From Ostrea edulis (Eukaryota), in the NCBI RefSeq assembly GCF_947568905.1, contig NC_079167.1:32550001-32614000 (forward strand): 64,000 nt of DNA, read 5' to 3'. A program made the position numbers and the translations under genes. Below are positions 12,300 through 42,520 of the stretch, piece after piece. Numbering within the stretch: the stretch's first letter is position 1; each line of letters starts with the position of its first letter. The notes beneath the pieces are model-generated. The model made no database searches. It was not told where the DNA came from and was given only the letters and a program-made list of their open reading frames with translations.

Positions 12300-13268
12300 A
12301 TGGCGGTGTTGCAAAAATGGCAGAATACAACACGCATTCCTTATGATTCTTTGATCGGAACTTTCTTTGTCGTGGAGTGTGTAATCGTCGGTCCCATCAT
12401 CCTTGGAAATCTCCTCATCATCATCAGCTTGCTAAGATTTCATCGTCTTCGTAAACGCATTTACATTCTGATTGGAAACCTTGCGGTGTCGGATCTCCTC
12501 ATTGGTCTCGTTTTCATTCCGTATGACCTCGTGTTTCTTTCAAATTTAGAACTTGCTCGTCAGAAGTATTTTTGCTTGATTCGCCACTCTTTGTCCGATA
12601 TGCTTCTCGGGGCATCCGTTATGAATCTTTTTGCTATTTCGTTCGAGCGGTATATGGCTGTCGTGCATCCTCTTAAGCACACCGTGATATGTTCCTGGCA
12701 GGCTATATCGATAATTGTCGTAGCTTCTTGGCTCTTGTCGATACTTCTAGCCTCGCTTCCAATTCTCGGCTGGAACCAATGGGAAGATAACATTCCATGT
12801 GATATTGAATTGATCTGGACTAAAGCATACAAGAGTATAATGTTCATATACTTTGCTTCATCTTTGATTGTGAACTTTTTTATGTATGTCAAAGTTGTGC
12901 GAACTGCTTGGAGACAGTTCAAAACCTGCGACAAGCCGACCCGGGGACCCAGTGACCGCACTAGAATAACCAACCGGTCCTACAGAAAGACCAAGATCAT
13001 GATTCTGCTGCTCGGGGCCTTCGCTATCTGTTGGGGTCCCTATCTGCTCCTCGTTATATTCGATGCATTATTCCTGGAAGACAGTAACACAGTGGCAACC
13101 GTCCGGAAATTTCTGTCAGTGATGGGTTTGGTAAACTCGGGACTCAATTGGATAATTTTTGGACTGAAAAACAAAGATTTCCGGAAAGCCTTCGCTTATC
13201 TGCTACGATGTGGAATTGGTGTGAGCGAAGACAGTCTGGCGGTATCTAGTTCAAACACACCAGTTTAA
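12300..13268 (+). CDS. Intronless class A (rhodopsin-like) GPCR, 322 aa, adenosine/melanocortin-like group
   Basis: Seven hydrophobic segments with GN (TM1), NLAVSDLL (TM2), FERY (TM3), SW..LP (TM4), CWGPY (TM6) and NSGLNWIIF (TM7), a helix-8-like KDFRKAF, an N-terminal NTT sequon and an in-frame stop just upstream of the ATG. Confidence 0.93.
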   Translation: MAVLQKWQNTTRIPYDSLIGTFFVVECVIVGPIILGNLLIIISLLRFHRLRKRIYILIGNLAVSDLLIGLVFIPYDLVFLSNLELARQKYFCLIRHSLSDMLLGASVMNLFAISFERYMAVVHPLKHTVICSWQAISIIVVASWLLSILLASLPILGWNQWEDNIPCDIELIWTKAYKSIMFIYFASSLIVNFFMYVKVVRTAWRQFKTCDKPTRGPSDRTRITNRSYRKTKIMILLLGAFAICWGPYLLLVIFDALFLEDSNTVATVRKFLSVMGLVNSGLNWIIFGLKNKDFRKAFAYLLRCGIGVSEDSLAVSSSNTPV

Positions 13269-27870: not shown

Positions 27871-29633
27871 ACATTACTAGCACGTGGTCCCCTGACATCG
27901 GAAGTTCGAACTTTTGGTTATAGCGTTTCACACACTGGACGATGTTGGTACCAGAGTCAACACGACAAAGGGTTTCTGATACACCACAGTAAACATAATT
28001 ACACATCATTGAATTTTCTAATAAGAAGATATCGATGCGTCAAAATATTATTAAGCATTGGTGCCCTTGCGATAATGCTACTTGGAAAATTTTGTCTCAC
28101 GAAGATGGGATCCCCTGAAGTGTTTTATTCAGTTTTTGGTCCCTTGGGTTCCGGATAATGGAAATAACAGAGGTTAAAAAAAATTCCATGGGAAGAAAAC
28201 AAGAGGGAAGTCTCGATTTGTTTTGAATGATTATCATGTAATACGTATTGATGTGGTAAAATCTTTCATGATGTAGGATAATATGTATTGATTGATGTGG
28301 TCAAATCTCTTATTATCATCATATTATGACATATATATGTATTGATGCGGTTAAATCTCTTATCAATTTAGATCTGAAATGATGTTCTATGACGAAGATG
28401 AAGGTAGCCTGGTTTCTTCTCTCGGAAACTTGCCAAACATGGATGACCTCACACAAGGCTTTCAAACCTTCCACAGCATGTAAAATTAGCAAATAAACTT
28501 AAAATTACCATATTACCCGCCAGAAAATAGCCAAAAATATTTACATTTACGGTACTCCATTTTCCCCTTAGCATTATAAATTTTCAACTTTTGACATTGA
28601 CTAATCACTGCGTATCAATACACTTGACATAATCACATGTAGACTTCCGTTTGAGAGCATAATACGAGTTTATTGTTAAAATCAAAACTATCATCTAATT
28701 TTTTTTTTAATTGTCTATCGGTTTTGAAAATATAAAAGGTGATATGCTTCGTACCTCTTCATATAGGCATATATTACCTCAGATATTTTCAGTTATTTTT
28801 TAATTAAACATTCAATATTTTTATTATAATTATAATATTCATTTAAAAAAAAGCATTTGGTCTTAAAGCGACTGTCTTTTATAACATCCATTTAAAGTTT
28901 ACACTGACTGGCACAGGACAGAGTGCACATGATATTCACTTAACGACCCGTCGAGGTGTACATCAATATTATGCCAAGTTTCAATAAATATTTATTTAGA
29001 ATCTTATCAATATAACACTTGCTTAAATCATTGATAGTTCGCCCATCAATATTGTTTATTAAAATTGCGGTAATTATTACCAGAAATTTTCGGTATATTT
29101 GACGGATGCGGCTTAATGCATTTCACATTGAACTTCTATAATCGTGGAGCCTCTGGTTGGGCCCGGTTTGTACAACCACGCCAGTTCTTTGTCTTTGTCA
29201 TTCAGGATTAAATGAACTATCAAATTCATTGTGATCCACTAGTAGAGATAAATGTAATATTTGATTAAGTCGATGATATCGGGTCAATAATTCATTCCCA
29301 ATTAAAATTTAAATTTTGAATTCAATGTTTTTGATGAGATAGATCCAGTCTGTCATTTGTGATGGGAAAATATTGCCAGATGGATTGTTTTTCTAAATAT
29401 TAGGGTACAACAAGTAATACTCGGGACTCTGCTGTGTTCCGTCTCTACATTTACTTTGGAATGAATTACTTTTAATTAAGAATCATGGATGGTAATTTAT
29501 GCAGAGTTTTTAAAATGATACAAGTTTAAAGGCGTCGAACCCCGAACATAATAACGATTTAATGGAATTAATTTATATGGAATCTACTTAATGGACATAA
29601 ATTTTAATGAGGTGGTAGGATTTCCTCTATAAA

Positions 29634-30545
29634 ATGCATCCCCCAAAGCCAGCTAGTTCCGCTTCGCGACTGAAGGCGAAGAAGAAGCACGTCATGAAAG
29701 ACATTGAGGAATGGATGGTGAAGGATCTCACACTGGATCTCAATCAGGGAAATACCCGGATGTCGGGCAAAAATGACGACACGGTGACGGAGGTCCGGAT
29801 GCTGAAAGCACGGCTGATAGACTTAGGAGTGGAACGCTACAAGTTTCTTTCTCAATTCTCCCATGAAAAACAAAAGTTTCTGGAAAACCGAAAACGCAAA
29901 GATGCAAGTGCTAAAAATCTGCGTTCCTACTCCACCATGAGTGAGCCCATCATGACCTACGTCCGACCGGGTACCACATCCTCCCGTCAGTCGGGAAACG
30001 AACGCAGCGACGCCGCAAGTACGGTCTCCAGAAAAACCGACTTCATAAGTCCCAAGGAGTACGTCCAAAACAACACTCAACCAAACACACGCCGACCGAT
30101 GCCACCCCACAGAGCCAAAACTGTCCAGTTTATCCCCCAGACCCTCCAGAACAAACACAGAAGCAGAGACAGTCGAACCGTGGTCAGCGAGCCCGCGAGA
30201 CTCGGGATTAGTCGGGAGAACACCATAGCGTCCAGCGTGTACAGTACCACAAACTCTGTGTCCTCCTTCAGACGGGACGAAGACGCACCTTGGTCACGGC
30301 GGAACAGACTCAGTAAATATGGCGGGAAATGTCCCAGCGTCACGGGCGATCCGCGATACGCCTTGCTGGAGGGAGCGCTGTCCTCTACGTATGACAAGCA
30401 CATCAAAACGAATGTGACAGACATTGTGGACAGAATTGAATCGCTTCGTAAACCTCCTAAAAATGCCAAAGAGGCCAAGCCGAAATGGGAGGAGAAGATT
30501 TTTGCCTTTATGAAGGAAGTCGGTATCGATTGGTCCGAGGATTAA
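29634..30545 (+). CDS. Intronless basic, largely disordered hypothetical protein (303 aa), paralog A
   Basis: Long GC-elevated ORF in AT-rich surroundings; aligns with the 37.6-kb ORF in three blocks (N-terminal coiled coil, KxVQF, C-terminal TxDPRYxxLExxL...PPK). Confidence 0.85.
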   Translation: MHPPKPASSASRLKAKKKHVMKDIEEWMVKDLTLDLNQGNTRMSGKNDDTVTEVRMLKARLIDLGVERYKFLSQFSHEKQKFLENRKRKDASAKNLRSYSTMSEPIMTYVRPGTTSSRQSGNERSDAASTVSRKTDFISPKEYVQNNTQPNTRRPMPPHRAKTVQFIPQTLQNKHRSRDSRTVVSEPARLGISRENTIASSVYSTTNSVSSFRRDEDAPWSRRNRLSKYGGKCPSVTGDPRYALLEGALSSTYDKHIKTNVTDIVDRIESLRKPPKNAKEAKPKWEEKIFAFMKEVGIDWSED

Positions 30546-31204
30546 GTGAATTTCATTTTACGGGTGTGCTGGATATTACGTTCAAATTGTGAGGGGGGAA
30601 AACGCAAAATGTCTTTCTTGAATGAACATCCTCAATGGGTATAACATACAACTCTGTATATTAACAATTTTTTTTTTTAAATAGCCATGTATGCAAAGTT
30701 TTAATCTACTAAGTTCGGTGTGAAATCATCCGACAACATTAAAGATGTTGATAGAAACTTTTCATTAATTTCGATTGTATGTCGTCTGAAAGCCAACCAG
30801 TATCACCGAAAAAATTAGTATTGTCGTGTTGCGAGATGAATCTACCCCTTAAAGGGATCATTTTGTTAAAATAATCTTTTAAAGAATTAAAATGAATCCA
30901 AATGACTCGTACAAGTCATTTCCTAAAATTAATAACAATTTTGTGCATTTCTTTCCGAGTTTAAAACGATTATAATCTTCACATTGCTTCACTTAAATTT
31001 TTGTTTCCTGGACTTTTGGCTCTTGTGTAACTTTTGATCAGCCTGCAATTTTTTCAAAGTTGATAAATATCATTCATTTATCTTTTTTCACAATTTAAAG
31101 AAGAATAAGATGATTTGGGATGTGAATAAAAATCACAAAAATGAGCTTTACTATCTCTTTATCTCGCATTATTGAAATAATCTCGAATTTAAGTTGGTTG
31201 TGTG

Positions 31205-31725
31205 TTGTTTAACGTTCCTCTCCAGAATCTTTCACTCCTATGGAGACGTCGTCATTGCTGGTGAATGGCAGCAAAATTTAGGACTCTGCTCGGCGCTTAC
31301 AGCCTTTGAGCAGCAGGGCCGTAAGTAGGGTTCTAAATCAGGGGAGGCAGGGGATTGGGGGCCGCCGATTGACTTTACGACTGAAAATGACACTTTTTAA
31401 ATCCCAATTTATCATGTTTGTGTTTCATTTGTACTATGTAAAGAATCGTAATATGGTGTCAAAGACAAAGGTGCTTGTCTTCATTTTAAACATATATCCT
31501 ATAATATAACATTTATATAATTTTATTTTCTTTTTTGCCAAAAAATCAGACGAGGCAGTTGCCTCGTCTGCCTCATCGGCAGTTACGGCCCTGAGCAGGG
31601 AGGGGTCTTTATCGTGCCACACCTGCCTCGGTTTTTGTGGTCTCATCCGAAGGACAGCCCCCATTTAGTCGCCTCTTACGACAAGCAAGGGTTACTGAGG
31701 ACTTATTCTAACCCGGATACCCACG
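31205..31725 (-). mobile_element. Deu/Nin-type SINE split by a MITE insertion
   Basis: Same family as 24768-25038; removing 31314-31598 restores GCCTTTGAGCAGGGAGG. Confidence 0.8.
31314..31593. mobile_element. 280-bp MITE with 11-bp TIR and 5-bp TSD
   Basis: TIR CAGGGCCGTAA / TTACGGCCCTG; AGCAG duplicated at 31309-31313 and 31594-31598. Confidence 0.85.
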
Positions 31726-33004
31726 GGATCTTCATTTTAAAAGAATGCAAATATCTTTCTGTTGAGACGCCTGGTTAGTATTACATAGAGGAAATGGGGT
31801 TTGTGTTAAATACTGAGAGAAAAATATCAGTTACCCGTCTGTGTCGGTCGGAGAAATAAATCTCAGCATGAATATCAATATGAAGTGAAATAAATAATGT
31901 TCTGACAATCGTACTGTAAATTTTAAGCACTCTACATTGATTTACTATCATAGAACCAAATGTTATCGTCCATTGAGACACTTTCATCTCGTACATTGGG
32001 GTGGGTTTCCCCCCAATAATACTCCATACTTCAATGTAAACTTAGTCTGATAGCCATATTAGCCCACACAATAATATTCAGGAAAATGTTATATCTGAAA
32101 GTATTTTCAATTTCCAGTAATCTTGATATGTTGAGGTTGGTATTAATAGGAATTCAAACAACAGATATACTTAAGGCGATATACATGTAGTTGTTTTCTC
32201 ATTGATTGCGTAATCAAGCGGTAATAATGTTATACTTTTTTCTAGTGGTGCTAAAAGGCTTTCAAGTTTGGTAAATGGAGAGACCATCAAAAGTGCAACA
32301 CAACGTAGAACTTCTAGCAAACTGTCTCAACCTCTCTAACGCTGGCGACTTTCGGTTATGTAAATTGGGCTCTTGGGAATGGGCAAGGGCAAAGGTTGGG
32401 GCACGTTTTCTAAAACTAACTATGTCAAATTCATGACGTATGTACTGAATAAATTTTGTATTGGGTCTGTAGTTCTAAGCAGTGGGTCGCAGCATCGCGT
32501 TTTAACAGAGGTTTACCTGTGTCCCTCACCGTGCGTACCTGCTATCGGTGTCAATGTCAGCAATGTATAATAATCCTCCAACACCTTTTTCTCATCTTCA
32601 GTCCTTTTTTATTGAGAGTTTTAAAAAATCGGGTTTCTTTTTTTTTTTTTTTTAAATTATATCACTTTTCTGTTTTGATCTAATCAATTTATCAAATGCC
32701 CCCATCTAGACAATGACATATCATTTCAACTTCTCCTCGGATCTCAGTTGGATCTCCTTAAAGATGGCATCAAATTTAAATATCTTCCTGTTCATGACGT
32801 TTGCTGTTTGATTCATTAAATGTCGGGCACTTTATTGTACATACGAGTACAGTATCCGGTTTCCACCATTTAGAAACAATGGCGTCAGCTTAGAATAAGC
32901 AAATTCATGACAGTCGATATGTATAATAGTACACAGCTGGCACCTAAAACGGAGCACAGCATTGTCTAGTTTCAACTATGAAATACTCAAGGCTCTTCGC
33001 ATAG

Positions 33005-33278
33005 TCCCGTGAGGATCTGGGTTGAAATAGGTCCTCAGTACCCCCTTGCTTGTCGTAAGAGGCGACTTTATAAATGAGGCTGTCCAACGGATGAGACAGC
33101 AAAAACCGAGGCCCCTTGTCACAACAGGTGTGACACGATAAAGAACCCTCCCTGCTCAAAGGCCGTAAGCGCCGAGCATAGGCTTAAATTTTGCAACCCT
33201 TCACCGGCAATGGTAACGTTCCATATGAGAGGAAAATTATCAAGAGTGACGTTAAACAATATACAATCAATCATACAA
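33005..33278 (+). mobile_element. Deu/Nin-type SINE
   Basis: GTCCCGTGAGGATCTGGGTTGAAATAGGTCCTCAGTACCCCC...GGATGAGACAGCAAAAACCGAGG...GACACGATAAAGAACCCTCC...GACGTTAAACAATATACAATCAATC; a short 3' fragment of the same family lies at ~56515-56570. Confidence 0.8.
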
Positions 33279-34865
33279 TCGCATAGCACGTCGACAATAT
33301 TTTCCCGTTAAAACAAGTCTAAGTATGCTGCATTACGTTTTAAGACAATACCAATGTATACGATGTGGATAGACTGGATTTTGAGGAGGGTTTTTTATTT
33401 TTATTTTGGCAAAACGTTTTAAGATTGTGTGTATTAGATAATTTTTTAGCGTGGTCTAACGTTTGCATGTATAATCATCAACACCATCGATTACAGCATT
33501 ATCTCACAAGACCATTGGTACGGTTCAGAAATATCAAATACGGTGATTTGGAGGTAATAGATGGTTTTCCATCGAAGCGATTAAGCAAGAGTTATTTCCC
33601 ATTGACCGCCATATTGTAGGTTAACATGCCCGGATTCCTTCATTATTCAACCAAAATCAGCCTTGTTATTCTGGTCACTGAGGTGGAGATAAACTGTTTT
33701 TCTTATTAATATACATTTGTTAATGCATCTTTTACTTCATAATTGCAATATTGCGAAGATTTCCCCCCATATATTTCTGTCTTACATGTTTGAAATTGGT
33801 TGCCCAAAGAGGAAAATCCACCAGTTTGACCTACAAGATGGCGGCCAAGGGGAATAACTCTGGGTCAAAATACGTCATATGAAAACCATCTATTGTGTTA
33901 AATATACTAGTGTAATATACTGGACTGATTTTGGGTATCTCTGTGATCTTATCTTGACCACAATCTACTGTCTGTTTAACACGACTGATAGCCCTGGGTA
34001 ACCATCACATGATCTAGATCGGAAACATGTATTTAAATTACTTTGGTCTAGTAAACAATTCCTGTACATAATGACTAAAATCTAAATAGCAAATAGATAT
34101 TATCGTGGATTCTATCGACTGTGCCCATTGTAAGCTCCCCCGATGAACAGAACAGTAAAATTTTATAAATATCGCGACGCATAATTTAAACGAGCAGGTG
34201 CGTTTTACGGATTTTACTTAATAACACGAGATAGATACCGGGAATTTTAACAGAGACTTTCGTCATCTTCCTGCTCTTATCTGGACAACCTGTAGTTATA
34301 CTTCCTTGTTATTGTGACCAGTGTATAAATATTTATTATGATTGTTGTAAGATAAAGCCGGGGATGCACGAACCCTGAATCCGTCACTTCCGTATCAAAC
34401 GAACTATATTTATATATAGCGCCTTATAGACTACAAATAACCACTCTAAAGCGTTACTCACACACACACACACACACACACACAGCATGTTATAACAGTA
34501 GTAAAAGGTAATTACGGTAGCATTAAGACAGGTAATATCAAAACAATGCTAGCAGAACATCAATAATGTGAAGTAAAATTACTAAAATTTAAAACATGCG
34601 GTGCATTAAGGAAGTTCCACGGCGTACAATCAAATAATATAAAATACAATAGTTGAAATAAATATACACTTGAATAGCTATAAATGTAGTGTGTTGAGGG
34701 TGCATTGATGCATTGATTCTCTACGATCAGAAATGATGATCGTTAGTTTTTATATTTCTCCCATCGATCTCTGATTTCTTCATTGGCGATTTCAAATGAT
34801 CCAGGCCAGATTACCCTGGTTTAGGTTATTGGAACACCTTCTGGTTACTGCTAAGTCAATTAGGA

Positions 34866-35115
34866 GTCCTGTACTAAGATGTGTTTATCTGACTGGTTAC
34901 CACTAAGTCCTGTACTAAGATGTGTTTATCTGTCTGGTTACCGCTAAGTCCTGTACTAAGATGTGTTTATCTGTCTGGTTACCACTAAGTCCTGTACTAA
35001 GATGTGTTTATCTGTCTGGTTACCGCTAAGTCCTGTACTAAGATGTGTTTATCTGACATTCGTCCGGCATCTGTCTGGTTACCGCTAAGTCCTGTACTAA
35101 GATGTGTTTATCTGA
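34866..35115. repeat. 41-bp minisatellite, ~6 copies
   Basis: GTCCTGTACTAAGATGTGTTTATCTG(T/A)CTGGTTACC(G/A)CTAA units at 34866, 34907, 34948, 34989, 35030 and ~35089. Confidence 0.9.
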
Positions 35116-37606
35116 CTGACCGTCCGTCATCTGTCCGGCATTGGGCTGTGTTAATCTGTTAATTTTTCACATTTCGACTTCTTAAGAACCATGTCATTTT
35201 CAAACAAATTTGGCACAATTATTCTACAGTCAAGTGGATTCAAACGATCAGACGCTGGGATCACGCAAGCTCACTTTTGATGTACATGTACAGCGTACAA
35301 TGTAAGCCTCACTTTCTCACTATATGTTCCTTTCATAAAAGTGAAACTGGGATCAAAAGTGAGCCCGTTTGAGTTTGAAGGCCCCGAATGGGAAATAATT
35401 CAGTACCTACGGTAAAAATCTAAATCCACGAAAACCACATCGTCGCAAACCACGGGTTATTGTTTCATTCTATTTCACAAATAGAATGAAACAATAACCC
35501 GTGGTTTTCGACGATGCGAAAACCAGTGAACCAGAGAAATGAAATCGTGCATGACAACTTCCTTATAGGTTTACATTTTATAATGAATTTTCAAGTGTGT
35601 CCAATACAAGGACGGGATCACGACAGAGGGTTTATAATCTTTCCTATACAGGTAGACAGAAAAATTCCTAATCTTCTGTAGAACCACCGAACGGAAAAAT
35701 CAAAACTTGCACGATCGCTTCCATACATTGTGGGGATCTAAGTTTGATCAAACAATGGCCTCCGGGGGGACAATATAGAGTTAAAAAGTTACATACAGGA
35801 AAATGGATGATTTTTTTTTACTTCTTCAAGGTCACAAGTAACCCCTGTACTAAGTATGAGCTTTTTACAGTTCCTCATTGAGAAATTGTGATATATAGAT
35901 CTTCCTACCTTTTTAATGTGACCTTGACCTTGGTTAATTAACTTTCTACATTGTACATTACCTAAATTTGAACCAAATACGAGTTCTTAATGTTTTCCCC
36001 CATTATAAAGTAAAGCTCGGACAAATACATTTAACTCTCTTTTACAACTGGCCCTGACCTTAGTCAGATGACTTGGTTTGGGGGTCATAGCACACTGTTT
36101 GGTCATAGGCAACATTTGTGTCAGTCATCGTCTACTCATTGTCTTTCCGTTACAAGTTGTTGTCAAGGTAAATATTACTTGTATTACCAGCGACTCGGGG
36201 CCACATGACCTTGGATGGGTCATGACACATGACTGATAATGATCTACCTTTGAGCCAAGTATGATTTTTAATAGTTCCACCACCAAGTTATGGCTCGGAC
36301 AAGGTGATTCATGTGATAGACCTAAACTTGGGGGGGGGGGGCTATCTAAAAGGTCAATTTCATATTTAAAATACATGAGGATATAAACTGTGAATCTTTA
36401 CGCCAACACACAATTATGAAGCGCGTTTGGGCTTCAAGAAAAGTATTCAGGCGTGAAGTGTTGCAGTTCATACCCTCATGTATTTTCATCTTATATTTAC
36501 ATTTTAGACGCACTTTTTAAAATTTCTGTCGGAATTCCTAGTCGTTAAAATATACGTATTATATTTATCAAGACTCGTATATGCATTGCCTAACAACTGC
36601 AGTGCGTTCATGATAAAATGGCTATCGTTACAATTTGTTATATATCAAAGGCAAAAACATTGGAAAAGTAAATATATAGTCATATTCCCAGTTTGTTTGT
36701 TAGATGCTATAGAGTAACGAATATTGACACAGATGTCATGCATTTCAGTATGAGCCATATAGCACCTGTCGTGGGTTTGAATTCGGACAGGAGTCATGAT
36801 TTCACAATTTTTGTTGAGACTTCTGTACTCATGATATAGACGGACCCAGTATATATGCTAGGTATTCAGGTAAAAACGAGAAGATTCCTAAAAGATTTCC
36901 CACATTTTCACCTTCTAACAAATTTAGCCCTGTCCTTGAGCCAGAACCCCTGACCAAGGGAAAATGAGTTTTCTTATTTGGTAGAGGGCCTTGACGTCTT
37001 TCTTAATATATGGCCAGTTTTTCTGATACCGGTATATAATTAAGAGTAAAGACTATACCATTTTTAAGGTCCATGGCCCATTCCTGGGGTCTCGAAGGGA
37101 TGGGGGTCATTAAAATGACAAGTCTTGTTCCCTTATCCCAGTGATGCTTCATTACAAGTTTGGTCAAAATTGGCAGGAGAAGAAATTAAACGACATAAGC
37201 ATGTGAACGGATCGCAAAAGGTGACTCGGGTGAACCCAACATACATTGTTCTGGGTACATGTATAACTTCAATGGTCTTGATAAAGCCGAAGTATTCCTA
37301 TGGACAAAACAGACATCTGTGTCGCATTGCTATAAAGTTCCAACACACAAGTGCCGTTTAGTCCGTATACAATCACTAAATCTGGTGTCCAATTGTTGCT
37401 GCCACTTTAATGCCTCCAAAGTGATGTATCGACGTGTCAACCCTCTGTCTTTTAACACGCCTGATATGTGTCCATTGAGCAAACCATATCAGATGAAGTG
37501 TCTGCATAAATAAAACACAAAGCAATTAAATCGCCTCTGCTGCATGTATGGAAACCCTAGAATACGTCAACAGATTTATACATATTTTCTCACTGCTGAG
37601 CTGCTA

Positions 37607-38593
37607 ATGACGCACCATGAAGCGGTATGTACAATGGAATTAACAGATACCCATATAAAGATGAAGGGCGAGGAGAGGAGACGAAGAGAGCGGATCAATA
37701 ATGCCGTGGCCAGGAGGAAGAAACGCGCTCATCAAATAAAGGAATGGATGCACGGAGGGAACCTTTACAACATCAGTAACACCCGACCCCCGGGGTTTCC
37801 TCCGCGACACTTCGTGGAAGAGAGAAAGTTGGAGGACGAGCTCTATAATTTGGGCAGGAAGCGACTCACGTATCAGTCTAGGTACGACAATGAGCGGATC
37901 ATGTTTATCGAGAACCAGAAGCGGAAATCTAGTGCAATACGACGACGGCTAGCGGACAGGAGTGTGGTGTCGCGGGGGTGGACGGTCAACGAACGCTCAC
38001 TTCTAACAAGGGAGGATTCCTCCAGAAACGAATTCACGGCCATGGGGCTGACATCCAAGGTTGAAACAAAAGAGGAACACGACAGACTCGAGACTCTTGT
38101 AGCGAAGTTGGAAGATGAGACTGTACAGCCAAAATTATCAAAAGAAAATACTGGTCAGCCATCATCTCGAGGAAAGGTGGTTCAGTTTAATCAAGTCTTC
38201 CAAACGGAAGTCCATTTAAGTAGAGAGCAAACCAAGGCCACGAACCGACAGATCAGTAGAACTCCAACGTTAGACCGTCTACCCAGCATTCACCGCGAGA
38301 GATCGAAGTCGAGAAGTCTCCCGATGGCATCACTGATTCCATGGTCCAAACTGAAATCGACCTCCATCCACCCCGGCAATCGTCTGCCACCGTTGACCTC
38401 TGATCCTAGATACAATCGACTTGAAAAACTGTTGTGTCCTGTGTATGTCTCTAAGAAATATCAGGATGTGTCAAGTGTTGTGGAGAAACTCGAGGCGCTA
38501 CACGCCCCGCCAAAACAGGTCCGCGTGAGTCGAATACAACGCGAGACGCGGATCCGAAACTTTCTCAGGGAAAAGGGGTTTCTGGTGACATGA
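37607..38593 (+). CDS. Intronless basic, largely disordered hypothetical protein (~320-350 aa), paralog B
   Basis: ORF 37544-38593; the true start is uncertain (Met at 37544, 37607 or 37634). Homologous to 29634-30545. Confidence 0.85.
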   Translation: MTHHEAVCTMELTDTHIKMKGEERRRRERINNAVARRKKRAHQIKEWMHGGNLYNISNTRPPGFPPRHFVEERKLEDELYNLGRKRLTYQSRYDNERIMFIENQKRKSSAIRRRLADRSVVSRGWTVNERSLLTREDSSRNEFTAMGLTSKVETKEEHDRLETLVAKLEDETVQPKLSKENTGQPSSRGKVVQFNQVFQTEVHLSREQTKATNRQISRTPTLDRLPSIHRERSKSRSLPMASLIPWSKLKSTSIHPGNRLPPLTSDPRYNRLEKLLCPVYVSKKYQDVSSVVEKLEALHAPPKQVRVSRIQRETRIRNFLREKGFLVT

Positions 38594-39284
38594 AGAATTT
38601 CAAAGGGACGTAGAGCAATTAACCCATAAGAAGAGATTTGTTATACAGTAAGCAGAAGAGCTATTTATATGCATGTATCTTAAAAATCTCAGGGTGTACT
38701 AGTATGTGGAAACAAGTATGACTGCATCTGTCAAAATAATCTGCATGTATCCTCTTGTGCTGTGTCTGTTGTTTATTTTTCTTGAGAAGTACCTATATGG
38801 TGTCAATTTTAATTAGATTTGCATGTATGTATGTACGGGATAACTTCTTCGTTAAGTCTTCTGGTCTTATAGGATTTGATCACGTGATCAACAGCAATAA
38901 AGTTTTAACATCCTCGACATCTTGCTTTCTGCTGTCGTCGACAAGAAACGTGTTTAATTAATTCATGTGTTGAACTGAAAAACACAAAATTTCACAAAGT
39001 TAACTTTGCCGTTTATATATATGCCAAAAGTTTTTGGAAAGCTATCTATACCATGAAAAAACATAATAAATTATGAGAAAGTTGTCACCATATAAAACTG
39101 TTAAAATCATTATTCTTAAAAGTGCACACACTTTCCTAATCCGAGATTCCTCTGACTCTTAACCCCGCTTTTATATTGTGACATGTGCCCCCGCATATGT
39201 CACAATATAAAAGCGGAGGTAAGAGTCAGAGGAATCTCGGATTAGTTAAGTACGTGCAACTCGTAATCTCTAGCTCTCAGTAAA

Positions 39285-39922: not shown

Positions 39923-41212
39923 ACACTGGTAAAATTGCAACATATGTTGCAATTTTACCTGTGTATGGGAGAGCTACAGACCCTCATGTTAACTTTATAC
40001 CTATATAGCGCAGTGGTGTTTTTTTTTTTTTTCTGAACCTTGCAGTGTATGTTAAAAACTTGAATATGTCATGTTTTGCTATGTGCTACTACTGCTGTTT
40101 ACGTATCTACAGCTTTCCCCGGTCTCTCGTCCGGACAGGAGCCGAGAGCTTCCGGACCGCAGTTACGGCCAGACTAGAGTATGTGTGTCACAATCGTCAA
40201 CTATGGATATATTTATCACAGGATGTAACATTGTCTTCTAAAGGGTCGTTATGACCTTCACCACAGGGATTCGTACTGCAAAAAAAAAAAAAGATAGTTC
40301 AATTTTTGTATTCCCGGAATAAGATTGTCAGCAGGGGCGGATCCAGGAGTTGCGGTTATTGGCGCAACTTTATGAGGCAGGGGGTCTGGGGGCCGCCTTG
40401 AGGCCCCCAGTGGGTCCAGGATGAAGCCCCCGGATTTTACAGATTTTATAGGGCTTGAAATATGTCTCCTATGTAGTCATTTTCACTATTTTCTTTCATT
40501 TTCATTAAGGTGAAATTAATGAAATGACGCAAATTTTAAGGGTTTTTAGAAAAAAATGTAAGATATCTCAATAAAAATCATTCAATAATTCAAAATATTT
40601 TGTCATTTATTCCTCCGAGAGTGGAAGAAATTGTTGCTTCTTTTATCGTTTACATTTTTCTAAACAAGAGACCACATTTTACCTTATCAGAATCTTGCTG
40701 TACATCACGTGACATACCTCCTCCAATAAAGACGACTTATCTCTAGTTACGGATTAATGTCAGTCTGTAAATTCGGCGTCATTGTGCACTGTGACCCGAG
40801 GGTCGCGGATATTTTTTTGGGAATATACATAACTCTTGTTTTTGTTTTAACTGAATAGCAATGGGACAAAAAGTAACCTGGGAAACAATAAAGATGGCAA
40901 AATAATCAATAAATAAATTAGATTAATTAAACTAACTGCTATCATTATAATGTAATATCTACATCATGTATCAAGGCCGCATTCAACTGATCAGACTTGA
41001 ATGAAGTATGATATTTGAAATTCATCTTTCCAAATCCTTTTCAAGTGAACATTTTAAATGCTACAGTAAGCCACACCTCTGCCCTAGATTGACAGTAAAC
41101 TAGGATCAAGAACACTGACGCAGAATGTTCTGTAACTATAGATAGGTTCAATCTAATCAAAATTATATCCTTCCATCCCTTAAACTTTGATTCCTACACT
41201 AAGGATGGTCAT

Positions 41213-42520
41213 CATAGAGAAGTGTATCATATAGGAGTGTATCATAGAGAAGTGTATCATAGAGGAGTGTATCACAAAGAAGTGTACTGTAGAGAAGTGT
41301 ACAATAGAGAAGTGTATCATAGAGATGTGTATCATACAGAAGTGTATCACATAGAAGTGTACAACAGAGAAGTGTATCATAGAGAAGTGTATCACAGAGA
41401 AATGTACTGTAGAGAAGTGTATCACAGAGAGGTGTATCATAGAGACGTGTACAATAGAGAAGTGTATCACAGAGATGTGTATCATAGAGACGTGTATCAC
41501 AAAGAAATGGACCATAGAGGAGTGTATCATAAAGAAGTGTATCATAGAGAAGTGTACTGTAGAGAAATGCATCACAGAGAAGTGTACTGTAGAGAAATGT
41601 ATCACAGAGAAGTGTATCATAGAGACGTGTACAATAGAGAAGTGTATCACAGAGATGTGTATCATAGAGACGTGTATCACAAAGAAATGGACCATAGAGG
41701 AGTGTATCATAAAGGAGTGTATCATACAGAAGTGTATCACATAGAAGTGTACTGTAGAAAAGTGTATTATAGAGATGTGTACCATACAGAAGTGTACAAT
41801 AGAGAAGTGTATCATAGAGGAGTGTATCATAGAGAAGTGTACTGTAGAGAAGTGTATCATAGAGAAGTGTACTGTAGAGCAGTGTATCATAGAAAAGTGT
41901 ATCGTAGAGAAGTGTATTGTAGAGAAGTGTATCATGCAGAAGTGTACTGTAGAGAAATGTATCATAGAGAAGTTTACTGTAGAGAAGTGTGTCATAGAGA
42001 CGTGTATCATAGAGAAGTGTACTGTAGAGAAGTGTATCATAGAGACATGTATCATAGAGAAGTGTATCACAGAGACATGTATCATAGAGATGTGTATCAC
42101 AGAGAGGTGTATCATAGAGAAGTGTATCTTGGAGAAGTGTACAGTAGAGAAGTGTATCTTGGAGAAGTTACTGTAGAGAAGTGTATCACAGAGACGTGTA
42201 TCATAGAGAAGTGTATCTTGGAGAAGTGTACAGTAGAGAAGTGTATCTTGGAGAAGTTACTGTAGAGAAGTGTATCACAGAGACGTGTATCATAGAGAAG
42301 TGTATCTTGGAGAAGTTACTGTAGAGAAGTGTATCATAAAGATGTGTATCATACAGAAGTGTATCACATAGAAGTGTACTGAAGAGAAATGTATCACACA
42401 GAAGTGTATCATAGAGAAGTGTACCATAGGAGTGTACCACAGAGAAGTGTATCATAGAGAAGTGTATCATACAGAAGTGAACCATAGAGAAGTGTACCAT
42501 CAAGGAGTGTATCATAGAGT
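41213..42520. repeat. 15-bp minisatellite (AGAGAAGTGTATCAT), ~85 copies
   Basis: Direct periodicity, with a higher-order ~180-bp duplication (41425-41535 versus 41605-41715). It generates the long repeat ORFs on both strands. Confidence 0.95.

What the first reader, a model, noticed from the sequence alone, without database searches (positions are those of the whole stretch)
29634..38593. Tandem pair of divergent intronless paralogs defining an unrecognised family: coiled coil + RVxF-type PP1 motif + DPRY domain
Seen: the two ORFs, about 7 kb apart and in the same orientation, align ungapped over 40 aa with 15 identities (TVTEVRMLKARLIDLGVERYKFLSQFSHEKQKFLENRKRK / HFVEERKLEDELYNLGRKRLTYQSRYDNERIMFIENQKRK). 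They share IxEWM upstream and a C-terminal block (PSVTGDPRYALLEGAL...VDRIESLRKPPK / PPLTSDPRYNRLEKLL...VEKLEALHAPPK) ending ExxIxxFxxExG. In the otherwise unalignable basic S/T/R-rich linker both keep KxVQF (KTVQF 30117-30131; KVVQF 38174-38188). Established: [RK]x[VI]x[FW] is the PP1 docking motif. Inference: this is an undescribed family of disordered PP1-targeting proteins, plausibly sperm/cilia-associated, arising by old retroposition or duplication.
Basis: partly seen in the sequence, partly recalled or inferred. Interest (0 to 1): 0.72.

Follow-up and report, generated by a model that had tools for sequence, protein, structure and literature searches.

The report
Unnamed oyster gene pair, likely PP1-docking
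Two neighbouring single-exon oyster genes are real, strongly conserved members of an unnamed protein family found across many invertebrate phyla, and in molluscs they keep a short motif that probably docks protein phosphatase 1, though that binding was not shown.

Summary
ORF1 (29634-30545) and ORF2 (37544-38593; likely true start 37661) are paralogs (BLASTP E 2e-22, 27% identity). They are the only two copies in this genome and are under strong purifying selection (dN/dS about 0.05).

No Pfam, PDB or fold match was found, and every named relative is "uncharacterized". An exhaustive profile search gave 120 cluster representatives, from molluscs, a brachiopod, a flatworm, a rotifer, echinoderms and tunicates. 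No vertebrate appeared among the 41 hits whose names were available.

K-x-V-x-F sits in a disordered linker. Within that linker in 58 mollusc representatives, its R-x-K-x-V-x-F positions are four of only seven that are at least 60% conserved. A stringent RVxF pattern occurs in 38 of 42 bivalve and non-heterobranch gastropod representatives, against about 0.8 expected. It is absent from all echinoderms, heterobranch gastropods and one bivalve paralog clade. PP1 docking is therefore a plausible mollusc-centred trait (about 55-60%), not a family-wide one, and binding itself is untested: the complex prediction gave no verdict.

The pair comes from an old tandem duplication within bivalves; nothing supports retroposition. 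A sperm or cilia role is untested. The family is genuinely undescribed, and I rate interest as moderate.

The parts
29634..30545 (+). Gene 1 coding sequence, one exon, 303 aa (slow-evolving 'ORF1-like' paralog)
   Evidence: ORF. Whole profile matched with no stops. 86% identical to a 303-aa annotated Saccostrea echinata protein. dN/dS 0.049 against another oyster genus.
29658..29939 (+). Gene 1 N-terminal helical module (residues 9-102), holding I-x-x-W and the NVTEERML...ERYKF-type long helix; the best conserved part of the family
   Evidence: AF2 helices 9-36 and 49-102, pLDDT 89-97 over residues 51-100. Conserved columns W27, R55, L57, R68, F82, K89.
30117..30131 (+). Gene 1 KTVQF (residues 162-166), an RVxF-type motif preceded by conserved R160
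   Evidence: R160, K162, V164 and F166 are invariant in 12 pteriomorph sequences and are four of only seven linker positions at least 60% conserved in 58 mollusc representatives. Lies in a low-confidence (disordered) stretch.
30333..30524 (+). Gene 1 C-terminal 'DPRY' module (residues 234-297): D-x-R-Y-x2-L-E-x2-L, then two short helices ending E-x-G
   Evidence: D239, R241, L245 and L249 are nearly invariant in 87 sequences. AF2 helices 240-249, 261-272, 283-296.
29189..29633 (+). Conserved non-coding region upstream of gene 1 (promoter or 5' UTR candidate)
   Evidence: Aligns at 74% with the flank of the ortholog in another oyster genus although synonymous sites are saturated, dS about 2.
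37661..38593 (+). Gene 2 coding sequence, one exon, 310 aa from the probable start (the open frame reaches back to 37544); fast-evolving paralog
   Evidence: Profile match 37661-38587. Ortholog P0009 starts at the same Met. The upstream ATG is not conserved as an ORF start. dN/dS 0.053. Transcript-like contigs of a sister species lie only on 37672-38755.
38174..38188 (+). Gene 2 KVVQF, an RVxF-type motif
   Evidence: K-[VMAST]-V-[QK]-F is present in 9 of 10 representatives of this paralog clade.
38195..38209 (+). Gene 2 VFQTE, a copy of the hydrophobic-[FY]-x-T-[EQ] linker motif, which is more widespread than the RVxF motif
   Evidence: The same motif occurs in echinoderm, tunicate and many unnamed non-mollusc members.
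38402..38413 (+). Gene 2 DPRY core of the C-terminal module
37367..37660 (+). Conserved non-coding region upstream of gene 2 (promoter or 5' UTR candidate; includes the non-conserved ATG at 37544)
   Evidence: Aligns at 71-73% with the flanks of two orthologs.
30546..37366 (.). Spacer between the paralogs, about 7 kb from stop codon to gene 2 and inflated by high-copy repeats (34394-34781, 35364-35557, 36334-36721)
   Evidence: Very high depth at those bins in the DNA run X4. The same gene pair lies only about 950 bp apart in another pteriomorph contig, L001.

Best explanation
These are two functional single-exon genes, tandem paralogs from an old duplication within bivalves. They belong to an unnamed protein family that is at least bilaterian-wide. 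Each protein has four parts: an N-terminal two-helix module (a short helix with an invariant Trp, then a helix of about 55 residues); a long basic, Ser/Thr-rich disordered linker; short linear motifs within that linker; and a small C-terminal helical module around D-x-R-Y-x2-L-x3-L. In molluscs the linker carries a strongly constrained R-x-K-x-V-x-F island. Its most likely job (inferred, not shown) is to insert Val and Phe into the RVxF groove of the PP1 catalytic subunit, so that the protein acts as a PP1-interacting or targeting subunit. The helical modules would supply localisation or substrate binding. Shown: paralogy, family breadth, purifying selection, disorder around the motif, and the conservation pattern of the motif. 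Inferred: PP1 binding and any cellular role.
For: Paralogy: E 2e-22, and only two copies in the genome. Family breadth: 120 cluster representatives at E<=1e-3, 89 at <=1e-10. Named members come from Pecten, Mya, Pinctada, Haliotis, Patella, Babylonia, Lymnaea, Aplysia, Lingula, Macrostomum, Adineta, eleven named echinoderm species (nine genera), Styela and Clavelina. Selection: dN/dS about 0.05 in both genes, including the linker. Structure: AF2 gives confident helices 9-36 and 49-102 and C-terminal helices, with a low-confidence linker. Motif: the stringent RVxF pattern [HKR][ACHKMNQRSTV]V[CHKNQRST][FW] is in the linker of 19/21 ORF1-like bivalve, 9/10 ORF2-clade and 10/11 non-heterobranch gastropod representatives, against 0.44, 0.17 and 0.18 expected from shuffled linkers. 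K, V and F are fixed, while the two x positions vary only within the residues PP1 tolerates (T, M, A, S, V, H, N, C and Q, K, H, S, T, N). In the linker, only R124, R160, K162, V164, F166, P187 and W220 are at least 60% conserved. Tandem order is conserved in another pteriomorph. The tree puts both paralogs inside a bivalve clade.
Against: No binding evidence: the predicted complex of ORF1 residues 145-200 with a PP1-type catalytic subunit scored 0.32 against a mark of 0.34, and a control with an unrelated protein in place of the phosphatase scored 0.55 (no verdict). The motif is absent from 14/14 representatives of the echinoderm clade (one unnamed sister row included), 8/8 heterobranch and 8/8 'Mya-418' clade representatives (two of the last have a 4-residue RVAF or RVVF instead), so the family's core function does not need it. 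No conserved secondary PP1 motif accompanies it: SILK is absent in molluscs, and a MyPhoNE-like match occurs only in this ORF2 and one ortholog. Expression evidence is thin: contigs of runs only guessed to be RNA, from a sister species.
Confidence: 0.55

Rival explanations
1. The conserved K-x-V-x-F island is a short linear motif for a partner other than PP1, or a mollusc elaboration of the older hydrophobic-[FY]-x-T-[EQ] linker motif. The match to the RVxF consensus would then be coincidental.
For: The [FY]-x-T-[EQ] motif is more widespread than RVxF and lies 2-3 residues downstream of it in ORF2, Haliotis and other gastropods. In Styela and heterodont bivalves the two overlap (KTVTFVTE, KTVQFQTD). 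The complex prediction gave no support. Lineages without RVxF keep the rest of the protein.
Against: The fixed and variable positions follow the PP1 RVxF rules exactly across about 40 representatives that are under 50% identical. No motif has Pro, an acidic residue or a bulky hydrophobic residue at the fourth position. Where both motifs occur they are separable elements (ORF2, Haliotis, P0021, P0040).
Confidence: 0.28
2. The family is a structural cytoskeletal or ciliary/flagellar protein whose function lies in the N-terminal helices and the DxRY module. PP1 docking, if any, is a secondary add-on in molluscs.
For: The N-terminal helical module and the DxRY block are the family-wide conserved parts. 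Members occur in ciliated marine invertebrates and in a bdelloid rotifer, a group known (from general knowledge) to lack males, which speaks against a strictly sperm-specific role. The protein-atlas feature search gave only weak leads to testis or cilia DUFs (score 0.79, below the useful range).
Against: No sequence hit to any chain in the PDB, which includes axoneme structures. No tissue or proteome data were reachable. The atlas scores are at the level that shuffled sequences reach.
Confidence: 0.15
3. One or both copies arose by retroposition of a spliced mRNA from an intron-containing parent gene.
For: Both coding sequences are uninterrupted.
Against: There is no third, intron-containing copy in the genome. 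The copies lie head-to-tail in tandem here and only 950 bp apart in another pteriomorph. Each has a long conserved upstream region. Full-length single ORFs for relatives sit on long genomic contigs in other groups, for example a 530-kb contig (P0198) and a 20-kb echinoid-like contig (P0183). An intronless coding sequence therefore looks ancestral to the family.
Confidence: 0.05
4. The ORFs are chance open frames or decaying pseudogenes.
For: None beyond the absence of annotation for some oyster orthologs.
Against: dN/dS about 0.05 with saturated dS. Orthologs occur across phyla. There are no stops.
Confidence: 0.01

Closest known systems
RVxF-type PP1-interacting proteins (PIPs): intrinsically disordered regulators such as inhibitor-1/DARPP-32 (KIQF), NIPP1 (RVTF) and spinophilin (KIHF); motif examples recalled from established literature, not checked here
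   Same: A basic-x-Val-x-Phe motif that meets both published consensus definitions, lies in a predicted disordered, basic region, has upstream basic residues, and is conserved while the surrounding linker is not.
   Different: No sequence homology to any known PIP or Pfam family. No conserved second PP1 motif (SILK, MyPhoNE, or a hydrophobic pair at the canonical +5 to +8 spacing; and inspection). The motif is not universal in the family. Binding is undemonstrated.
MYPT-type PP1 regulators (MyPhoNE R-x2-Q-[VIL]-[KR]-x-[YW] plus RVxF)
   Same: Window ORF2 has RAHQIKEW on the conserved I-x-x-W helix, an exact MyPhoNE pattern match, plus an RVxF motif.
   Different: The match occurs only in this ORF2 and one ortholog among 110 sequences. 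The family consensus at that site does not fit MyPhoNE. It lies about 140 residues upstream of the RVxF rather than about 20 (the MYPT spacing is recalled from literature), and there are no ankyrin repeats. I treat it as lineage-specific or chance.
Testis/cilia DUF families suggested by the atlas feature search (DUF5520/C10orf120, TEX33/CIMIP4, DUF5528)
   Same: Similar size, largely disordered and basic.
   Different: Feature scores of 0.76-0.79 are in the range reached by shuffled proteins. hmmscan against Pfam found none of these families in the two ORFs or in ten distant members at E<=10, or in 87 members at E<=0.01. Not related on present evidence.

Membership tests
RVxF-type PP1-interacting protein | Sequence matches the RVxF consensus ([RK]-x(0,1)-[VI]-{P}-[FW]; stringent form [HKR][ACHKMNQRSTV]V[CHKNQRST][FW]) | tested here: met
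   KTVQF (30117-30131) and KVVQF (38174-38188) match both forms.
RVxF-type PP1-interacting protein | The motif lies in an accessible, disordered segment | tested here: met
   AF2 pLDDT below 50 for residues 101-234 with 12 sequences, and 41-63 with 87 sequences, with no secondary structure there. This is a prediction only.
RVxF-type PP1-interacting protein | The motif is evolutionarily conserved among orthologs | tested here: met
   38 of 42 bivalve and non-heterobranch gastropod representatives against about 0.8 expected. It forms the main conserved island of the linker. Not met family-wide: 0/14 in the echinoderm clade, 0/8 heterobranch, 0/8 Mya-418 clade.
RVxF-type PP1-interacting protein | Physical, motif-dependent binding to the PP1 catalytic subunit | tested here: inconclusive
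   The complex prediction with a PP1-type subunit (L018 ORF, 426 bits to human PP1-alpha) returned 'no answer'. This needs a bench assay.
Any Pfam-A family | Hit above the gathering threshold | tested here: not met
   No hit for either ORF at E<=10. Among 87 members, one stray sub-threshold hit. Ten distant members gave only chance-level hits.
Retrogene (processed copy) | An intron-bearing parent gene elsewhere, a dispersed location, and poly(A) or target-site-duplication remnants | tested here: not met
   Only two copies, both intronless and adjacent. Tandem order is conserved in L001. Upstream regions are conserved. Poly(A) and target-site-duplication remnants were not specifically searched for.
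Coiled-coil protein | A long amphipathic helix that oligomerises | tested here: inconclusive
   A helix of about 55 residues (49-102) is predicted with high confidence. Heptad register and self-association were not tested.
MYPT-like (MyPhoNE + RVxF) | A conserved MyPhoNE motif N-terminal to the RVxF | tested here: not met
   The pattern is present in only 2 of 110 sequences.

The most novel reading that the evidence does not exclude
An ancient bilaterian protein family has so far escaped description. It is present in spiralians, echinoderms and tunicates and has not been detected in vertebrates or ecdysozoans. It is built from a helical hairpin, an [FY]-x-T-E linker motif and a DxRY module. 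In molluscs it acquired a high-fidelity RVxF site and became a lineage-specific PP1 regulatory subunit, then duplicated in tandem early in bivalve evolution into a slow and a fast copy with divided roles.
Probability: 0.3. Interest if true: 0.6.

Novelty: new member of a known kind. Interest (0 to 1): 0.45.

Why it matters
PP1 gets its specificity from hundreds of docking subunits, and almost all known ones come from vertebrates, yeast and flies. A conserved, unannotated candidate subunit in molluscs, with relatives in at least six phyla, would add a new PP1 holoenzyme. It would also offer a clean natural experiment in the gain and loss of a short linear motif: kept in most bivalves and basal gastropods, lost in heterobranchs and in one bivalve paralog, and absent in echinoderms. 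Apart from PP1, the family is a well-defined "dark" family that Pfam lacks and that some oyster annotations seem to miss. The conserved modules defined here would allow a family model to be built.

Tried and rejected
1. Complex prediction. I paired ORF1 residues 145-200 with an intronless PP1-type catalytic subunit taken by reference from a giant-virus MAG contig (L018:2336-3289; RVxF-groove residues conserved). The result was 'no answer': 0.32 against a mark of 0.34, and one control scored higher. It counts neither for nor against binding.

2. The oyster's own PP1c is split over several exons (L006, L013, L008).

3. Fold searches of the AF2 model against the PDB (Foldseek) and the ESM Atlas found nothing meaningful. 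This is expected for helices plus disorder.

4. PDB sequence searches with the family profile and with the ORF2 motif segment found nothing relevant.

5. Protein-atlas feature searches gave only sub-threshold leads or none.

6. Literature searches for locus names, run accessions, the motif string, and RVxF with oyster and sperm returned nothing useful. I recalled from memory that the PP1-binding segment of KNL1 resembles the ORF2 arrangement of RVxF followed by VFQTE. I could not verify this, so I dropped it.

7. LC8 (TQT), calcineurin (PxIxIT) and basophilic-kinase readings of the motif region were rejected by inspection. The Gln of FQTE and the Thr of KTVQF are not conserved, whereas K, V and F are.

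8. The AU test on the full 110-row tree did not finish in three runs. A reduced 63-row set was used instead.

9. The read-laying run covered gene 2 only because of the 6-kb limit. The expression of gene 1 was not examined.
Full report
**Observation.** The window is AT-rich animal DNA.
- BLASTP aligns them over about 300 residues at 27% identity, E 2e-22.
- The quoted 40-residue block has 15 identities.
- I-x-E-W-M, KTVQF (30117-30131), KVVQF (38174-38188), the DPRY block and the C-terminal E-x2-I-x2-F-x2-E-x-G are all present.
- A profile of the family finds only these two copies in the 895-Mb genome, both without stops.

**The genes are real.**
- Orthologs of ORF1 at 78-86% identity exist in other oysters, including an annotated 303-aa Saccostrea echinata protein. 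Pinctada has one at about 50%.
- ORF2 has its own set of orthologs.
- Against orthologs from other oyster genera, dN is 0.10-0.13 while dS is saturated at about 2, so dN/dS is about 0.05. The linker is constrained too, at 0.05-0.11.
- About 445 bp upstream of gene 1 and about 290 bp upstream of gene 2 are still 70-74% identical between genera despite that saturation. This points to conserved promoter or 5' UTR sequence.

**Start of ORF2.** ORF2 probably starts at 37661, not 37544.
- The profile match begins at 37661.
- Ortholog P0009 starts at the equivalent Met.
- In two other genera the counterpart of ATG 37544 runs straight into a stop.

**Expression.** The evidence is only suggestive. Two runs of a closely related species, guessed to be RNA, hold contigs on 37672-38755 and nothing on the unique flanks. 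A DNA run of the window's own species covers everything evenly. Gene 1 was not examined because of the 6-kb limit.

**Origin of the pair.**
- On another pteriomorph contig (L001) the two paralogs lie in the same order and orientation, only about 950 bp apart. The 7-kb spacer here is inflated by high-copy repeats.
- In the tree both paralogs fall inside a bivalve clade (SH-aLRT 87-92), which sits inside a mollusc clade (99).
- ORF2 belongs to a long-stemmed, fast-evolving clade. A second long-stemmed clade contains a 418-aa Mya protein.
- Forcing those two clades together is not rejected and is slightly better (lnL +2.0, p-AU 0.62; long-branch caveat). The duplication therefore predates the oyster/pearl-oyster split and may predate the pteriomorph/heterodont split.
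- Nothing points to retroposition. There is no intron-bearing parent. Relatives in other groups are also complete single ORFs on long genomic contigs. An intronless coding sequence thus looks ancestral, and the pair looks like a tandem duplication.

**The family.**
- Pfam gives nothing for the two ORFs at E<=10, nothing for 87 members at E<=0.01, and nothing above chance level for ten distant members at E<=10.
- The PDB gives no sequence hit, and fold searches give nothing.
- The exhaustive profile search over 1.84 billion representatives returns 120 clusters at E<=1e-3, 89 at <=1e-10 and 23 at <=1e-30.
- Every named member is "uncharacterized" or "hypothetical". Named members are:
  - bivalves: Pecten, Mya, Pinctada, Saccostrea;
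  - gastropods: Patella, Haliotis, Babylonia, Lymnaea, Aplysia, Plakobranchus;
  - other spiralians: Lingula, Macrostomum, Adineta;
  - echinoderms: Asterias (two species), Acanthaster, Patiria, Strongylocentrotus, Lytechinus, Diadema, Apostichopus, Antedon, Anneissia;
  - tunicates: Styela, Clavelina.
- No vertebrate or ecdysozoan was seen, but names were available for only 41 of the roughly 130 distinct proteins recovered, so absence is not proven.
- Family-wide modules are:
  - an N-terminal helix with an invariant Trp;
  - a helix of about 55 residues (consensus NVTEERML...L.ELSKERYKF);
  - a linker motif, hydrophobic-[FY]-x-T-[EQ];
  - a C-terminal D-x-R-[YF]-x2-L-x3-L block.
- The last two C-terminal helices are missing in echinoderm and tunicate members.

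**The PP1 motif.** AF2 places K-x-V-x-F in the low-confidence linker.
- In 58 mollusc representatives, each under 50% identical to the others, the only linker positions at least 60% conserved are R124, R160, K162, V164, F166, P187 and W220.
- Counts for the stringent pattern [HKR][ACHKMNQRSTV]V[CHKNQRST][FW] in the linker, against shuffled-linker expectation:

| Group | With motif | Expected |
|---|---|---|
| ORF1-like bivalves | 19/21 | 0.44 |
| ORF2 clade | 9/10 | 0.17 |
| Non-heterobranch gastropods | 10/11 | 0.18 |
| Other non-mollusc | 5/35 | 0.57 |
| Echinoderm clade | 0/14 | 0.27 |
| Heterobranch gastropods | 0/8 | 0.16 |
| Mya-418 clade | 0/8 | 0.18 |

- Two members of the Mya-418 clade have a four-residue RVAF or RVVF instead.
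- The anchor residues K/R, V and F are fixed. The two x positions vary only within the set PP1 tolerates. That is what selection for PP1 docking predicts.
- It argues against a phosphosite reading, because the Thr of KTVQF is V, M, A or S in the ORF2 clade.
- It also argues against LC8-type readings of the neighbouring FQTE, whose Gln is not conserved.
- The motif is clearly not a family-defining feature.

**Direct test of binding.** The oyster PP1c gene is split into exons. Instead I used by reference an intronless PP1-type ORF from a giant-virus MAG contig. It scores 426 bits to human PP1-alpha against 293 to PP2A, and the C-terminal groove segment (LMCSF) is conserved. The complex test with ORF1 residues 145-200 returned no verdict. 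It is not used as evidence either way.

**Verdict.** PP1 docking is the best single explanation for the mollusc-conserved motif, at about 55-60%, but it is unproven and not universal in the family. Retroposition is unsupported, and a sperm or cilia role is untested.

Noticed in passing
window 12300-13268 (+): An uninterrupted 322-aa ORF encoding a rhodopsin-family GPCR (7tm_1, E 1.2e-41); apparently another single-exon gene upstream of the pair.
   Followed up: partly
window 9871-10464 (-): A 197-aa ORF with a reverse-transcriptase fragment (RVT_1, E 1.9e-07); a retroelement remnant.
   Followed up: partly
window 41180-42265, both strands: Long overlapping ORFs on both strands (311 aa on -, 347 aa on +) in a stretch with strong GC skew (0.18). 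There is only a weak sub-threshold pentapeptide-repeat hit. It looks like low-complexity or repeat DNA rather than a gene.
   Followed up: partly
window 29189-29633 and 37367-37660: The non-coding regions upstream of both paralogs are 70-74% identical to those of other oyster genera although synonymous sites are saturated. Both genes have TATAAA directly abutting the start codon (tataaaATG at 29626-29636; tataaagATG at 37654-37663). Candidate conserved regulatory elements; no motif was identified.
   Followed up: partly
window 37724-37747 (+): ORF2 residues RAHQIKEW match the MyPhoNE PP1-binding pattern exactly. Only one ortholog (P0010) shares the match, so it may be chance.
   Followed up: yes
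window 34394-34781, 35364-35557, 36334-36721, 39050-39243: Very high-copy repeats (depth in the thousands to tens of thousands against about 36 for unique DNA in the DNA run) fill the spacer between the paralogs and the 3' flank of gene 2.
   Followed up: no
L018:2336-3292 and L019:2222-3265 (IMG/VR giant-virus MAG contigs): Contigs binned as giant viruses carry intronless PP1-type catalytic subunit genes. L018 scores 426 bits to human PP1-alpha with the RVxF groove conserved. Whether they are viral or eukaryotic contamination was not examined.
   Followed up: partly
Mya arenaria proteins P0083 (LOC128221868) and P0093 (LOC128221875): The slow and fast family members of Mya have locus numbers only seven apart and lie on the same 71.6-Mb scaffold. 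This hints that the tandem arrangement also exists in heterodont bivalves.
   Followed up: no
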